This document shows, in pieces, positions 51,941 through 64,000 of a stretch of 64,000 nt of DNA (positions are counted from its first letter, which is position 1; each line of letters starts with the position of its first letter). Source of the DNA: Octopus bimaculoides (taxonomy: Eukaryota); contig NC_068995.1 in assembly GCF_001194135.2 (NCBI RefSeq), positions 50,030,852 to 50,094,851 on the forward strand. Direction: 5' to 3'. Under the pieces are notes generated by a model. It was not told the DNA's origin, did no database searches, and saw nothing but the letters and a program-made list of their open reading frames with translations. The translations under genes and the position numbers were made by a program.

Positions 51941-52049
51941 ACTACTTTGGCACAAGTGATGAAGGTGGTAGTAGTGTTGGTGGTTGTTGTTTTTAGGCTT
52001 GAGAAATGTTGTGTAGTAACAACACTTTGTCTTTGGTTGAGCCATCTCA

Positions 52050-52570
52050 CATAACTTGCTTCCTGTCAGCAGCTGGACAAAGCACATCTCTAAAATGGTC
52101 AAGAAAGCCGGGGGTGTCTTGGCATCACTCAGCAAGACCTTTGTCAGCCACTCTCCAGCTATCTATTTATTATGGCTATGGTGTGGCCACACACTTGGAA
52201 TTTGCATCACCAGCCTGGAACCTCTGTCTTGTTCAGGACATTGACCTCCTGGAAACTGTCCAGAGACATGCAACCAAGTGAATACCCTCCATCAGGCATC
52301 TTCCATACTCTGAACGCCTTGTTTCGCTGGGCATAGATACACTGAAGCTCCGACGTCTGGCAACTGACTTGGTAAACACCCACAAAATTATTAACCATCG
52401 TGCCAACAACTACCTTGAGCACCTTTTTGAGCTCCATGTGTCTAACACATGTGGCCATGCCTACAAAGTCAGAAAACAGCACAGCTCCCATGGCTCTTGG
52501 AAACATTTTTTCACACTCAGAGTTGCTGAAGCATGGAACAAACTACCTGCATCAGTTGTTAGCTGTTGAG
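52050..52570 (+). mobile_element. CR1-like LINE reverse transcriptase C-terminal fragment, frameshifted
   Basis: HLEFASPAWN...DIDLLETVQRHATK and KHFFTLRVAEAWNKLPASVV are typical CR1-clade RT C-terminal motifs. Confidence 0.9.
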
Positions 52571-58703: not shown

Positions 58704-59489
58704 CTCTATATATCTATCTGTCTATCTATCTACTTGTTATGCATATATCGGTTTGTCTTCCCCCATTCCCTCTCTCATACACACACACACACACAAACAC
58801 ACACTGATCTAATTCCTTGCTCTTCAGATTCCTTCTGTTTCTCTTTCTTTATTCCTCCCCCTTTCCTTTCCTTTTGCTTCTTTCTTAGTTTCTATATTTC
58901 TCTCATTCTTCTAGACTCTTTTCCTTCTTTTGCCTCTTATTTCTCATTTTCGATTCCAGTGTCCCACCTCCTTCTCTCTCTCCCCCTCTCTCTTTCTCAT
59001 TTTCTTTGTGAGTGTGTGTATATGTGTCTCTTTTGAACTCCTTTTCTCTCCCTCACTGACTTCAGCCTTTTTCTTCCAATCTTTCTCACCACTTCTCTCT
59101 CTCTTTGACTCTTTTTTTCACATGTCTCTAAGTCTTTCAGATTTTCCCCTTTTCTCACTCTGTTGATAACATCTTCTCTTCCCCTTAGTTTTCTCTCTCT
59201 CTTCCTCAATATACTCTGATTCTCTCAATATTCTCTCTATCTATCATATCCTGTCTTTCTCTTTGTCAATGTCTCCCCGTCTGTCTGTCTCATTCCTCTT
59301 CCGTTCATCTCATCCTTTTTCTCTCCCTCAACATCTCTATAATTTATATCATTGTCTATTCTTTTATCTTGTCTCTCAATCAATAAATAAATCAATCGAT
59401 TAGTCATTTAATCAATTACTCAATCAATCAAGGTTTCTGTCCGCCTGTCTGATTGTCTGCCTGTCTGTCCATCTCTCTGAGTGTGCGTC

Positions 59490-59891: not shown

Positions 59892-60000
59892 CGATCAACT
59901 GTCCGCAATCGCAAATTCGATCAATTGTCCAATAGTACAAATCCGATCAACTGTCCAATAGCACACATTCGATCAACTGTCCACTAGCGCAAATTCGAGT
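59892..60000. repeat. 26 bp minisatellite x4 (cgatcaactgtccaatagcacaaatt)
   Basis: Units at 59892, 59918, 59944 and 59970. Confidence 0.9.
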
Positions 60001-60221
60001 AACTAAGTGAAACTGCAACTAAATGAAAGCTCTAACTTTCTCTTTCATTTAAAAAATGTACGCCCGGTCTGAGAATCGAAACCGCGATCCTATGACCACG
60101 AGTCCGCTGTGTGTGCGCGCACGCGTATGTATGTATGTATGTATGTATGTATATATATATNNNNNNNNNNNNNNNNNNNNNNNNNNNNNNNNNNNNNNNN
60201 NNNNNNNNNNNNNNNNATATA

Positions 60222-60479: not shown

Positions 60480-60862
60480 TCGTTAGGGAGTCGAATATAA
60501 TGCTTAGCGGCATTTTTTCTGGCTTTTTACTTTCTGAGTTCAAATTCTACCTAAGTTGACTTTATCGTTCTTTCGGGGTCGACAAAATAAGCACCAGTGG
60601 AGCGCTGAGGTCGGTATAATTGGCTATCCTCTTCCCCACAAAATGTCATGTTTATGCCTACAGAAGAAAGAATTTATATAAAGCGAGTTGGCAGAATCGC
60701 TAGTGAGTCGGACAAAATGCTTCCAGCTCATTACGTTTTGGGTTCAAATTCTGCCGAGGGCAACTTTACCTTTCATCCTTCCGGCATTGATAAAATAAAT
60801 AGCAGTTGAATACTGAGGTCGATGCCCTTAAAATTGCCGTCCTTTCGCCCAAGTTTAAAACT
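60480..60862 (+). mobile_element. Two tandem diverged SINE family A copies
   Basis: aatgcttagcggc...ctgagttcaaattc; gagttggcagaatcgctag...gggttcaaattctgccgagg. Confidence 0.75.
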
Positions 60863-60879
60863 TTAATTTAAATGAAGAG

Positions 60880-60965
60880 TTATCTGCTCTTACATTCCTA
60901 GCTCCTGAGTTAATTTCTGTAATTCATTTTTCGACAAAACACATCGTATTGTACAACAGGTGAGT
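60880..60965 (+). promoter_or_regulatory. Initiator/first-exon module 1 ending CAG|GTGAGT
   Basis: ttatctgctcttacattcct at 60880; donor GT at 60960. Confidence 0.5.
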
Positions 60966-61116
60966 AGAAATTCCTTTACGTTTGATCAGAGACGTTGCAA
61001 AAGGATAAAAACATATTCTGGTAGACAAAATTTTCTTTAGTCTATCTACCTGTTGATTGAATTGATCGCCCCCAAAATGTTTTTATTCCTAGCCACACCG
61101 AGCCATCTGTTTAAAC

Positions 61117-61278
61117 CAAGCATGGGCAAACTTTTTAGAGAACCGGTCTGCCCGAGTCATGACTCGTCATCGGGTGGACCACACTATAAAAAAAAATTTT
61201 TTTTTAAATGATTCAAGGTAATTTTTCGTGAGGTGTGTCTTTCAGAAAGTCTCACGGACTACAGATTGCCCATTACCG
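61117..61278. mobile_element. hAT MITE with 8 bp TSD GTTTAAAC
   Basis: TSD at 61109-61116 and 61279-61286. TIRs caagcatgggcaaact / agattgcccattaccg pair at 11 of 16 positions. Confidence 0.8.
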
Positions 61279-61675
61279 GTTTAAACTTTCATTTGAAATT
61301 TACAGCTAATTTATAATTATGATTTGCAAGTTATGCTCTACGTTTGTTTCCCTAATATCATTTAATAGGACTTTAATGTGTAAGATACATGGGTATATAT
61401 TTGTTGGTTAACTACGATTGATTTTTCTTTGATATCTAGTCATTTGTATTTCAGTATCAAGATTCAACTTTAATTTTTAAAATTTATATGAAAATTTGTC
61501 TTCAATGGATTATAACCAATTATTTATTCTTCAATAATTAGTAGTGATTTTATGTTTAGATATGACTATTTTTTATTCGTGCAATGTTAATGCAACGTCA
61601 AGATTTCCTTGTCCGAAATTAAAAAATCTGGAACAGTCGCTTATCATTTATCTCAATATGATGTTTTAAAATTTA

Positions 61676-61850
61676 AGGCGGCGAGCTGGCAGAAATGTTG
61701 ATTTGCCGCACAAATTCCGCCGAGGTCGACTTTCCCTTTCATCCTCTCGGGGTCGATAAATAGAATACCAGTTGAGTACTGGGATCAATGTAATAGACTT
61801 ACCCCATCCCCGAAATTGCTAGCTTTGCCCCAAAATTGAAACCAATATGC
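61676..61850 (+). mobile_element. SINE family A, internally deleted
   Basis: aaggcggcgagctggcagaaa...caaattccgccgaggtcgactttccc. Confidence 0.8.
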
Positions 61851-62178
61851 TGTTTAAAATCTGATGAGGAACCGGTGTGTATTCCTCATAAGTTTTTCTG
61901 TGGGGAAACAGAGTGTTGTGTTCAGCCGTTTGTTTTTTCATAGAAAAAAAATTTCCTATCCTGAAAAATACCTCTTACTAAAACAAGTTATTGTTATTTC
62001 TTTACAAATAAAAAAAAAATTCAGATGTAAAGTATGTTTGGCATTTTTCTCATATCAGTTAACAAAGACATGTAGTACTTTCGTTTTTCTATACGAGGCG
62101 GTACCATGGCTAGTGAGGTAATTTTGAGGCGTGGCTATTGTTTATTGAAAGCTATATATCTTTTAATAGCACTTTCGA

Positions 62179-62274
62179 TTATCTGCTCTTACATTCCTCA
62201 CTCGATTTGTAAACATTTATTCGAAATTTGCGCCAGAACACACACATACGCAAAAATATATATTGCAGGTGAGT
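62179..62274 (+). promoter_or_regulatory. Initiator/first-exon module 2 ending CAG|GTGAGT
   Basis: ttatctgctcttacattcct at 62179; donor GT at 62269. Confidence 0.5.
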
Positions 62275-63039
62275 AGAGATTCAGTCACTTCTATTTAAGC
62301 CTTGATCTCAAATTTGCTCGTAAATTCATAATAAACATAACTTTTGATGCAGTTTTCTGTGTCCATATTCAACTAATTGGATTTTTTGTCTCTTAAAATG
62401 TATATACAGTATGTTATCTGCATACTGCAGATAACATGTCTTTAGATATTTAGGTGATTCGAGATTCACTGAGTCAATCAAACTAAACCACTTTGTATAA
62501 TCTGTAGGAAAGAAGCGTATTACGAATTATTATCTGTAATATATTTCTTCCAAAAAGCTGGTATTGATCAAATATTTAGGTGTTTCACATTGAGAGATGA
62601 CATTTTATAAGTGCAATTTTGATATAAATCTCACTTTCCTTCGCGTTTTAATTGGTTATACTATTTTATGCACTTGAGATACAGAAGACCTGGTATCGAT
62701 GTTAAAACAGGTGAGTGATGATGACTAGATCATGGTTTAAAAATATTAAAAAAACATTCAAGTTGAGTTTATGATTACATATAACATGTTCTCTACTTTT
62801 ACGTATCTGTTTGCATCTACCTAACAGGGCATTTTCTTTCTACTATTTAATTCTTAGTTCGGTTTATATACTGTTTATGCGGCTGTGTGAGTGTACTCGT
62901 TTTGATAAACTACAGAATACAATTTCTCTGCTATTTTTGACTTTTAGAGTCGATTTAACTTCAATTCATAAAATTTGCTGGCAAAGTGAATTCTAGATGC
63001 AAACTGCATGCGAATATATAAAATTATAACTATTTTCAG

Positions 63040-63300
63040 TCGACTCTAGTGTCCCACAACGTTCACTTTCTATCTCCCGTCCTCTTCCTTCTAAACACAA
63101 AGGACTTGTTGCCATATTCAACAGCGCCTGTGCTTATGCAAATGACACGGTCCTTTACTCATCTTTAACCTTCCTTAACTGTGCATCATCCACGCGCCAA
63201 ATTTGCATTGAACGTAAGCGAAGACCCTAAAGGCATCCTGCTGTAGGATCGTGGCCAACATTTTCGTTTTTAACAGTAAAATCTCAAGTGTTACTCATAT
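63040..63300 (+). mobile_element. Old LINE RT fragment
   Basis: IFNSACAYANDTVLYSS is a degenerate YADD motif; stops and frameshifts follow. Confidence 0.55.
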
Positions 63301-63946
63301 AAAGAAAACACTAGCACACAGCAACACTCAGCTGGAGCCTTCATAGTCGCTCCAAATTTTGGACCTCAATATCATTGAAATTCTCTCCTGGTGAAAGAAT
63401 GTCTTTAGCATAGCTAGGACATACATCCCAAAGATTGTACTTTGGTCTTCAAGGCCAGAAAATATTTCACTTCCCGACAACTATTGACATTCTGTCTACA
63501 ATGCTCCTCTGAAATGGATGAAGTCACATGTATAAAGCTTGTATATATGTGGCCATGTAATTTTTGAAGTTATTTGTGTTTTACGAATTAAACAAGACAA
63601 AAATGTTCTGCATATAGTTCGCAAACTTTTCTATATAGTGGTTGTTTTCCAGTTGATAAGGCAGCTCCCCATCGGATAACAGTGGGGATTGAATTAACAC
63701 CCACTGTGAAATTTAGACTGGGAGTTTGCGACTGTAAATCTACTATAGGAAGTTAATATCTGAGAGGAGCAGTTCACAAGGGTGGCGTGTCAGGATTAAT
63801 ATCGATTGAATCATACAATTATACGATTAATAAAAGTTATCTCATATCAAAGTCAATTATTGAGAGTTATTGACGCATCACAAACTATTGATTTGTGAAG
63901 CGAGAATGGAATGCGGAAATCAAATAGCTTAGCAACAGTCTACAAG

Positions 63947-64000
63947 TTACCTGCTCTTACATTCCTAACTTGTTTTGTAATCACTTATTCTAAATCGGCA
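63947..64000 (+). promoter_or_regulatory. Module 3 (truncated by window edge)
   Basis: ttacctgctcttacattcct, followed by 34 nt clearly homologous to module 2. Confidence 0.45.

What the first reader, a model, noticed from the sequence alone, without database searches (positions are those of the whole stretch)
60880..64000. Tandem array of paralogous initiator-short exon-donor modules (candidate alternative first-exon system)
Seen: TTA(T/C)CTGCTCTTACATTCCT occurs at 60880, 62179 and 63947. Modules 1 and 2 end 80-90 nt later in CAG|GTGAGTAG (60960, 62269). Modules 2 and 3 stay homologous for another 34 nt. A fourth, more diverged unit (TCTCACTTTCCT at 62629, CAG|GTGAGT at 62711) is followed by a possible 59 nt exon 62828-62886. 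TTACATT and TCACTTT fit the YYANWYY initiator, TTATCT is a GATA site, and GC-box-like motifs (gaggcgtggc, gggtggcgtg) lie upstream of modules 2 and 3. Spacers are filled by unrelated TEs and no coding exon lies between modules. Knowledge: arrays of duplicated promoters/first exons spliced to common exons exist (vertebrate clustered protocadherins, UGT1). Inference: a duplicated-promoter array feeding a plus-strand gene beyond the window.
Basis: partly seen in the sequence, partly recalled or inferred. Interest (0 to 1): 0.72.

Follow-up and report, generated by a model that had tools for sequence, protein, structure and literature searches.

The report
Tandem exon-like repeats in octopus DNA
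Four old copies of a ~100-base unit (a perfectly kept 20-base block, then a perfect splice-donor site 60-70 bases later) sit in a row at the edge of a gene-poor octopus region; they look like alternative non-coding leader exons of a gene beyond the window, but no transcript data could be consulted, so this is unproven.

Summary
TTAYCTGCTCTTACATTCCT occurs three times on the + strand (60880, 62179, 63947), against 0 expected. CAGGTGAGT occurs three times in 64 kb, against 0.47 expected. All three lie on the + strand inside this array, each 69-79 nt after a module core. A fourth, decayed unit (62621-62716) is probably genuine.

The window is octopus DNA: SINE-rich, full of gaps, with no recognisable gene.

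New findings:
- The flanks and exon bodies have decayed to the random level of identity. The 20-mer (20/20, 19/20) and the donor (16/18) are islands, which points to purifying selection.
- The units are non-coding and free of ATG.
- The "GC box" and TATA-like motif upstream of module 2 belong to a 3'-truncated U4 snRNA retropseudogene (62084-62166, 11-nt target-site duplication) inserted 1 nt upstream of the 20-mer.
- The TATA-like motif upstream of module 1 lies inside a SINE. No promoter sequence upstream of the 20-mer is conserved.

Best reading (about 0.4): alternative non-coding leader (first) exons of a + strand transcript that continues beyond 64000. Rivals: a short repeat family with conserved ends, internal alternative exons, or a repeated regulatory element. 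Interest is modest.

The parts
60880..60974 (+). Module M1. The 20-mer is at 60880-60899, the exon-like body runs to 60959 (80 nt, no ATG), and the donor is CAG|GTGAGTAGAAATTCC with GT at 60960.
62179..62283 (+). Module M2. The 20-mer is at 62179-62198, the exon-like body runs to 62268 (90 nt, no ATG), and the donor is CAG|GTGAGTAGAGATTCA with GT at 62269.
62621..62716 (+). Module M2b, a diverged fourth unit. The core TCTCACTTTCCT is at 62629-62640 (10/12 match). CAG|GTGAGT is at 62708-62716, 79 nt after the core as in M2. It contains 2 ATGs and is probably decaying.
   Evidence: (E 0.27); spacing argument is my own calculation
63947..64000 (+). Module M3, cut by the window end. The 20-mer carries one T>C change, and the next 34 nt are 74% identical to M2. 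Its donor, if present, lies beyond 64000.
62084..62166 (+). U4 snRNA-like, 3'-truncated retropseudogene inserted 1 nt upstream of the M2 20-mer. It is flanked by TAGTACTTTCG (62073-62083) and TAGCACTTTCG (62167-62177).
   Evidence: (RF00015, 30.3 bits, E 3e-4, 5' ~85 nt at high posterior probability); absent at M1 and M3
60680..60864 (+). SINE copy immediately upstream of M1, with target-site duplication AATTTATAT (60671) / AATTTAAAT (60865). Only about 15 nt of non-SINE sequence separates it from the 20-mer. A second copy (60476-~60665) lies just upstream.
61678..61830 (+). Third SINE copy, in the M1-M2 spacer.
61884..62083 (+). Ancestral upstream flank of M2. Once the U4 insert is excised, it aligns collinearly but barely above noise with 63746-63945 upstream of M3.

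Best explanation
An ancient local duplication produced at least four copies, in one orientation, of a segment containing a short non-coding exon. The neutral parts have since decayed to saturation and been broken up by retroposons (two SINEs next to M1, a U4 pseudogene next to M2).

Selection has kept two elements in M1, M2 and M3. One is the first 20-26 nt. The other is a consensus 5' splice site 57-67 nt further on.

The most likely function is a set of alternative untranslated leader (first) exons of a + strand transcript. Each would start in or near the 20-mer, whose TTACATT fits an initiator, and each would splice from its own donor to a common acceptor to the right of the window. Downstream modules would be skipped because they lack acceptors. 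M2b would be a decaying member, as expected under birth-and-death evolution.

Shown: paralogy, the conserved islands, the donors, non-coding status, and the retroposon insertions. Inferred: transcription, start site, splicing, and a shared acceptor.
For: - The 20-mer occurs 3 times against 0 expected.
- CAGGTGAGT occurs 3 times against 0.47 expected, all on the + strand within the array and at a constant 69-79 nt from the core.
- Island pattern: the 20-mer is 20/20 and 19/20 and the donor 16/18. The M1-M2 body is 33/55 = 60%, the same as unrelated 200-mers under the same aligner (61 +/- 5%).
- The M2-M3 module is 44/54 against 116/187 for the upstream flank, Fisher p = 0.009.
- The flanks are still weakly collinear, so the copies arose by segmental duplication rather than by insertion of a sharp-ended element. 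With the U4 insert excised, M2 upstream versus M3 upstream scores 15.5 against 11.1 +/- 1.8 locally, on the same diagonal. The global 200-nt score is 12 against 4.5 +/- 2.4, p = 0.007-0.024.
- The introns after the M1 and M2 donors score 14.5 against 11.1 +/- 1.5, p = 0.037.
- There is no ATG in 224 nt of M1+M2+M3, against 3.6-5.1 expected (p = 0.006-0.06 by the different nulls), while CAT occurs 7 times. This fits a + strand 5'UTR.
- The units are not coding. Lengths are 80 and 90 nt, and the M2/M3 differences are 5 non-synonymous to 2 synonymous in the only shared open frame (and inspection).
- There is no convincing acceptor at the module starts. M2 has no AG there, and M1 and M3 have an AG behind a tract that is only 50% pyrimidine (inspection).
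Against: - No transcript evidence of any kind could be obtained.
- Nothing upstream of the 20-mer is conserved.
- Retroposons sit 1 nt (M2) and about 15 nt (M1) from the 20-mer, so any promoter would have to be confined to the 20-mer or be retroposon-derived.
- There is no CpG or GC enrichment (34% GC).
- ATG depletion is only marginally significant, and the copies are not independent.
- Genome-wide copy number of the unit is unknown.
- No acceptor or coding exon is in view.
Confidence: 0.4

Rival explanations
1. The unit is a short non-autonomous repeat (MITE- or SINE-like, or a fragment of a larger element). Its two ends are conserved because the source elements needed them for mobility. The donor-like end would then be fortuitous, and the cluster a local accident.
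For: - The variable interior with conserved ends is also what TE subfamilies show.
- M1-M2 homology outside the two islands is at noise level.
- The region is packed with retroposons.
- Genome-wide copy number could not be measured.
Against: - There are four copies in one orientation within 3.1 kb and none in the other 61 kb of the window.
- There are none in about 62 kb of O. sinensis and O. vulgaris DNA.
- Flanking sequence beyond the unit is weakly but collinearly homologous.
- No target-site duplication or terminal inverted repeat was found, and 5'-end/donor complementarity is no better than chance.
- The conserved 3' end is exactly the 9/9 U1-complementary consensus.
Confidence: 0.2
2. 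The modules are internal alternative exons (cassette, poison or mutually exclusive) of the 5'UTR or of a non-coding RNA, inside a very long + strand intron. The 20-mer would serve as branch point (CTTAC) plus polypyrimidine tract, or as an exonic enhancer, rather than as a start site.
For: - The 20-mer is 75% pyrimidine, contains CTTAC (yUnAy), and is followed at once by AG in M1 (TTCCTAG).
- M1 and M3 have AG at -2/-1.
- Lack of upstream conservation matters less for this model.
- The window looks like a giant intron or a gene desert.
Against: - The AG after the 20-mer is not conserved (TAG, TCA and TAA in the three copies), and in M2 the next AG is 44 nt from the putative branch A.
- M2 has no AG at its 5' edge.
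- Pyrimidine content upstream of the M1 and M3 edges is about 50%.
- Lengths of 80 and 90 nt do not keep phase.
- No complementary docking copy of the 20-mer lies on the + strand of the window.
Confidence: 0.15
3. The 20-mer is a repeated DNA-level regulatory element, for example a composite GATA (TTATCT) plus TEAD/M-CAT (CATTCCT) site acting as an enhancer or insulator unit. The donors would act only as U1 sites or be incidental.
For: - The sharply bounded, perfectly conserved 20-26 nt block is the size of a composite factor site.
- It tolerated insertions 1 and 15 nt away.
- The motif matches are recalled from memory, not tested.
Against: - This does not explain the conserved consensus donor at constant distance and on a constant strand, or the ATG depletion.
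- M2b keeps the Inr-like core but has lost both the GATA and the M-CAT matches.
- Any 20-mer matches some factor motifs.
Confidence: 0.12
4. The modules are non-functional relics of partial duplications of some gene's 5' end, and the conserved blocks are chance or short gene-conversion patches.
For: M2b shows that copies can decay. No function has been demonstrated.
Against: With the flanks saturated, 39/40 identical positions across three copies of the 20-mer is not credible under neutrality. Conversion tracts of only 20 nt with no flanking homology are implausible.
Confidence: 0.1
5. The modules are spliced-leader RNA genes, which would imply SL trans-splicing in a mollusc.
For: - There are tandem short units with a conserved 5' block and a donor.
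- A conserved TGTAA lies 30-38 nt in.
- A U4 pseudogene and a weak SmY-like hit lie nearby.
Against: - The sequence between the conserved block and either candidate donor varies between copies.
- There is no Sm site, no SL RNA family hit, and no stable fold (z = 0.25, -0.89 and -0.53 for the three + strand folds).
- The units are not homogenised and their spacing is irregular (1299, 442 and 1326 nt).
- This model does not explain the second, perfect donor.
- A literature search found nothing relevant on SL trans-splicing in cephalopods.
Confidence: 0.03

Closest known systems
[quoted passage not shown]
   Same: - Both are tandem arrays of paralogous 5' exons in one orientation.
- Each exon has its own donor.
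- Both show birth-and-death decay of members.
- Pcdh has a short conserved sequence element (CSE) at a fixed position before each variable exon, which parallels the 20-mer.
   Different: - Those variable exons are long and coding, whereas these are 80-90 nt and non-coding.
- The Pcdh CSE lies upstream of the exon in a conserved promoter and binds CTCF (CGCT box). Here nothing upstream is conserved and there is no CGCT box.
- The constant exons and promoter use are unknown here.
Genes with several untranslated alternative first exons spliced to a common coding exon 2 (e.g. NR3C1, BDNF, NOS1, plectin; from general knowledge and Zhang, Haws & Wu 2004, cited in PMC1885805)
   Same: Both have short non-coding leader exons, donor-only architecture, no ATG, and a coding part elsewhere.
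   Different: In those genes the leader exons are mostly unrelated in sequence. Here they are paralogues with a shared 20-nt start.
Tandem exon duplication giving mutually exclusive exons (e.g. Dscam, PMC1397879)
   Same: The origin is local exon duplication, and selection acts on splice signals.
   Different: Those exons are internal, coding, equal in phase, and have acceptors. None of this holds here.
3'-truncated snRNA retropseudogenes flanked by short direct repeats (classic U1/U2/U3/U4 pseudogenes; from general knowledge)
   Same: The element at 62084-62166 covers U4 positions 1 to about 83, is diverged, lacks the 3' stem-loop and Sm site, and is flanked by an 11-nt repeat.
   Different: It is incidental to the modules. 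It matters only because it accounts for the 'GC box' and resets the upstream flank of M2.

Membership tests
Multiple-variable-first-exon array (Pcdh/UGT1A type) | Tandem paralogous 5' exons in one orientation | tested here: met
Multiple-variable-first-exon array (Pcdh/UGT1A type) | Each unit ends in its own 5' splice site | tested here: met
   CAG|GTGAGT is present at M1, M2 and M2b. The M3 donor lies beyond the window.
Multiple-variable-first-exon array (Pcdh/UGT1A type) | Units lack a 3' splice site | tested here: inconclusive
   Inspection only. M2 has no AG at its edge, and M1 and M3 have an AG behind a tract of about 50% pyrimidine. No splice-site model was available.
Multiple-variable-first-exon array (Pcdh/UGT1A type) | Each unit has its own promoter or start site | not testable with these tools
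   No CAGE or RNA data were available. Upstream flanks are not conserved and are retroposon-derived at M1 and M2.
Multiple-variable-first-exon array (Pcdh/UGT1A type) | Splicing to shared downstream constant exons | not testable with these tools
   The window ends at 64000. Attempts to extend it failed.
Multiple-variable-first-exon array (Pcdh/UGT1A type) | Variable exons encode protein | tested here: not met
   There is no ATG, lengths are 80 and 90 nt, substitutions are 5 non-synonymous to 2 synonymous, and there is no protein hit.
Untranslated alternative first exons with a common coding exon | Short non-coding leader exons with donors and no uATG | tested here: met
Untranslated alternative first exons with a common coding exon | Transcripts start at each leader and join one acceptor | not testable with these tools
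Spliced-leader RNA genes | Leader exon conserved through to the donor, followed by an Sm site and stem-loops | tested here: not met
   The interior varies between copies. There is no SL family hit. The + strand fold z-scores are 0.25, -0.89 and -0.53, none significant.
Spliced-leader RNA genes | Homogenised tandem gene units | tested here: not met
   Spacing is 1299, 442 and 1326 nt and the spacers are unrelated.
Dispersed transposable element | Many unlinked copies in the genome | tested here: inconclusive
   There are no copies in the other 61 kb of the window or in about 62 kb of O. sinensis/O. vulgaris DNA. This excludes only a very abundant family, roughly more than 6e4 copies.
Dispersed transposable element | Sharp ends with target-site duplications or terminal repeats | tested here: not met
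   The flanks are weakly collinear between copies. End complementarity is at chance level.
miRNA cluster | The conserved ~21-mer lies in a stable hairpin arm | tested here: not met
   The upstream partners would be a SINE and a U4 insert.
Mutually exclusive exon cluster with docking/selector pairing | Equal-phase internal exons, and a docking site complementary to the repeated element | tested here: not met
   Lengths are 80 and 90 nt. No complementary copy lies on the + strand of the window, although a docking site outside the window cannot be excluded.
U4 snRNA gene (for 62087-62238 only) | Reaches the Rfam gathering score with an intact 3' stem-loop and Sm site | tested here: not met
   The score is 30.3 bits against a threshold of 46. 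The 3' half aligns at low posterior probability. This makes it a pseudogene.

The most novel reading that the evidence does not exclude
The modules are the visible start of a larger octopus array of paralogous non-coding leader exons. Each would be marked by a 20-nt element playing the role of the protocadherin CSE, so that promoter choice alone, rather than coding diversity, would give cell-specific expression of one downstream gene. This would be an invertebrate, non-coding counterpart of vertebrate variable-first-exon clusters.
Probability: 0.1. Interest if true: 0.65.

Novelty: new member of a known kind. Interest (0 to 1): 0.3.

Why it matters
If transcripts do start at these units, the locus would be a clear invertebrate example of a birth-and-death array of paralogous untranslated first exons. 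It would also supply a 20-nt candidate core-promoter or leader element in cephalopods, where promoter architecture is essentially undescribed. In addition it would show that such an element keeps working after retroposons replace everything upstream of it. If the unit turns out to be a dispersed repeat, the finding is ordinary. In either case the supposed GC-box and TATA promoter evidence is explained away by a U4 pseudogene and a SINE.

Tried and rejected
- Extending the window or finding orthologues:
  - Exact look-ups of two ORFs overlapping M2 found nothing on record.
  - A 1751-aa pseudo-protein made of all six-frame open pieces near the modules had no hit among 5.8e9 proteins.
  - Loci fetched through LINE-derived Octopus proteins share only repeats with the window. 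This was checked by BLAST for L002 and L003. L005 overlaps L003. L004 was checked only by motif and profile search.
- A metagenome scan of the 20-mer gave one match in an unrelated contig, taken as chance.
- Rfam found nothing at gathering thresholds. Permissive scans gave only the U4-like hit and noise.
- Coding exon: rejected. There is no ATG, the lengths are out of phase, the substitution pattern is non-synonymous, and there is no Pfam hit.
- RNA structure or miRNA: rejected. Fold z-scores are about 0.
- Pairing of the 20-mer with its own donor: not better than shuffles for M1 and M2.
- Docking-site complement in the window: none.
- Derivation of the 20-mer from U4: rejected. It lies outside the target-site duplication, and M1 and M3 have no U4 match.
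- Literature: there was no hit for the motif string, and nothing on octopus alternative first exons or cephalopod spliced leaders.
- A two-module 1.75-kb duplication (M1 to M2b = 1741 nt, M2 to M3 = 1768 nt) is suggested by a weak collinear chain but is not established.
Full report
**Context.** The window has no tRNA, no Rfam family at gathering score, and no long ORF that is not microsatellite or gap. A LINE reverse-transcriptase tail at about 52.0-52.6 kb has its best matches (77-82% amino-acid identity) in annotated proteins of Octopus sinensis and O. vulgaris. The abundant SINE has about 9 copies in the window. The DNA is therefore an octopus genome, in a gene desert or a very long intron.

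**Check of the observation.** TTAYCTGCTCTTACATTCCT is at 60880, 62179 and 63947 on the + strand. Nothing else matches within 3 mismatches on either strand, and 0 were expected.
- CAGGTGAGTAG follows at 60957 and 62266, so the GT is at 60960 and 62269.
- CAGGTGAGT occurs only three times in 64 kb (the third at 62708) against 0.47 expected. All three are on the + strand.
- The exon-like stretches are 80 nt (M1) and 90 nt (M2).
- M2 and M3 are 44/54 identical up to the window end.
- The fourth unit (M2b, 62621-62716) reaches only E = 0.27 with a profile of the other three. Its core matches 10/12 and lies 79 nt from its donor, exactly as in M2. By my own estimate this is about a 1e-3 coincidence, so I accept it as a decayed paralogue.
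- Self-comparison finds only the modules and SINEs in common.
- ORFs between the modules are short and have no Pfam match.

**What lies upstream of the modules.** A permissive Rfam scan found a U4 snRNA match at 62087-62238 (30.3 bits, gathering score 46, E = 3e-4).
- The first ~85 U4 positions (5' stem-loop/K-turn and the U6-pairing region) align at high posterior probability. The 3' half aligns poorly.
- The good part, 62084-62166, is flanked by TAGTACTTTCG and TAGCACTTTCG. Chance is about 0.06 by sampling this microsatellite-rich window and about 0.003 by simple calculation.
- This is a 3'-truncated U4 retropseudogene inserted 1 nt upstream of the M2 20-mer.
- M1 and M3 have no U4 match.
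- Upstream of M1, a SINE copy (60680-60864) with target-site duplication AATTTATAT/AATTTAAAT ends 15 nt from the 20-mer, and another SINE precedes it. M1's TATA-like TTTAAAA lies inside that SINE.

The motifs that looked like promoter elements are therefore retroposon sequence that the modules do not share.

**Duplication and selection.** When the U4 insert and one repeat copy are removed, the M2 upstream flank aligns with the M3 upstream flank on the same diagonal.
- Local score: 15.5 against 11.1 +/- 1.8 (p = 0.03 by shuffles, 0.011 against genomic 150-mers). With the insert left in, p = 0.20.
- Global score over 200 nt: 12 against 4.5 +/- 2.4 (p = 0.007 and 0.024).
- The introns after the M1 and M2 donors are also weakly collinear (p = 0.037).

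The copies therefore arose by segmental duplication of more than the module. The flanks have decayed to saturation: their 62% identity equals the 61 +/- 5% that unrelated sequences give with the same aligner. The M1-M2 exon body is also at that level (33/55). Against this background the 20-mer is 20/20 and 19/20, the donor block is 16/18, and the M2-M3 module is better kept than its flank (Fisher p = 0.009). A 20-nt island is too short for gene conversion, so purifying selection on two short elements is the simplest account. A weak chain of matches at an offset of about 1750 nt, together with the spacings M1 to M2b = 1741 nt and M2 to M3 = 1768 nt, hints at a two-module unit that was duplicated once more. 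This is tentative.

**What the unit is not.**
- It is not coding.
  - M1-M3 have no ATG.
  - The one frame open in all three copies has stop codons just upstream.
  - Lengths of 80 and 90 nt break phase.
  - M2/M3 differences are 5 non-synonymous to 2 synonymous.
- It is not a structured RNA or a miRNA (z = 0.25, -0.89, -0.53).
- The complementarity between the pyrimidine-rich 20-mer and the purine-rich donor is no better than chance for M1 and M2.
- It is not an SL RNA gene. The interior varies, there is no Sm site, the units are not homogenised, and a second perfect donor would be left unexplained.
- It does not derive from U4.

**What it most likely is.** The modules combine several features:
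- donor-only architecture;
- a constant strand;
- a constant distance between a conserved 5' block and a 9/9 consensus donor;
- non-coding status;
- absence of ATG (0 against 3.6-5.1 expected, p = 0.006-0.06, with 7 CAT).

Together these fit alternative untranslated leader exons of a + strand transcript whose acceptor and coding part lie beyond 64000. However, its promoter half rests only on the Inr-like TTACATT inside the 20-mer, which M2b retains as TCACTTT. The element has stayed intact with foreign DNA 1 and 15 nt upstream. This argues either for a start site defined by the 20-mer itself or for a function at the RNA level.

**Rivals that I cannot exclude:**
- a short repeat family with conserved ends. 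There are no extra copies in 61 kb of the window or in about 62 kb of two other Octopus genomes, which bounds only very abundant families;
- internal alternative exons, with the 20-mer acting as branch point plus pyrimidine tract. The AG positions are not conserved;
- a repeated factor-binding element.

**Comparison with known systems.** The arrangement works like the variable-first-exon clusters of vertebrates (UGT1A, GCNT2, protocadherins; PMC1885805). The 20-mer recalls the protocadherin CSE found at a fixed distance before each variable exon (PMC7811963). Membership fails on one defining feature, because the variable exons are not coding. It cannot be tested on two others, namely own promoters and shared constant exons. 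It is closer to genes with several untranslated first exons, except that here the leaders are paralogues.

**Limits.**
- No sequencing runs could be consulted.
- Attempts to reach the right flank or orthologous loci failed.
- A metagenome scan gave one chance match.
- The literature searches found nothing on such arrays in octopus.

**Verdict.** This is a real, probably selected, tandem set of exon-like units. The alternative-leader-exon reading is plausible (about 0.4) but unproven, and its promoter evidence is largely explained away. Novelty is modest.

Noticed in passing
62084-62166 (+), direct repeats at 62073-62083 and 62167-62177: A 3'-truncated U4 snRNA retropseudogene (Rfam RF00015, 30.3 bits, below the gathering score) with an 11-nt target-site duplication (10/11). 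It was inserted 1 nt upstream of the module-2 20-mer.
   Followed up: yes
60476-~60665, 60680-60864, 61678-~61830, and about 6 further copies (28840, 31274, 35203, 38768, 47445, 48009): An abundant octopus SINE, with 6 plus-strand and 3 minus-strand BLAST matches in the window. The copy next to M1 has a 9-nt target-site duplication (8/9). Its head (GGCAGAATCGCTAGTGAG) loosely resembles the U4 5' region, which is probably coincidence.
   Followed up: partly
62411-62437, within 62372-62474: A perfect 12-bp palindrome (ATGTTATCTGCA tac TGCAGATAACAT) inside a 103-nt imperfect inverted repeat. It contains TTATCTGC, the first 8 nt of the 20-mer, as two inverted GATA-type sites. It could be a MITE remnant or a regulatory palindrome.
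   Followed up: no
~52006-52560 (+): A LINE reverse-transcriptase C-terminal fragment with stops. It is 77-82% identical at the protein level to annotated Octopus sinensis and O. vulgaris 'proteins', which identifies the genus. The copies fetched were paralogous, not orthologous.
   Followed up: yes
59892-60021: Four to five tandem copies of a 26-nt unit (CGATCAACTGTCCAATAGCACAAATT), just after a long (TATC)n/(GATC)n microsatellite.
   Followed up: no
60060-60110: A sequence resembling a tRNA T-arm and acceptor (ggtctgagaatcgaaaccgcgatcc), probably the remnant of a tRNA-derived SINE. ARAGORN calls no tRNA.
   Followed up: no
63406-63477 (-): A weak SmY-like Rfam hit (21.5 bits, E = 0.14), taken as chance.
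   Followed up: no
63040-63071 and 58950-58981: A shared 32-nt repeat (78%) at the start of a more GC-rich block at 63040-63480, which looks like another TE fragment in the M2b-M3 spacer.
   Followed up: no
L001 10279-10301 (metagenome contig SDBT01018301.1): A 23-nt exact match to the M2 20-mer plus CAC in an unrelated contig. About as many such matches are expected by chance in a collection of that size.
   Followed up: partly
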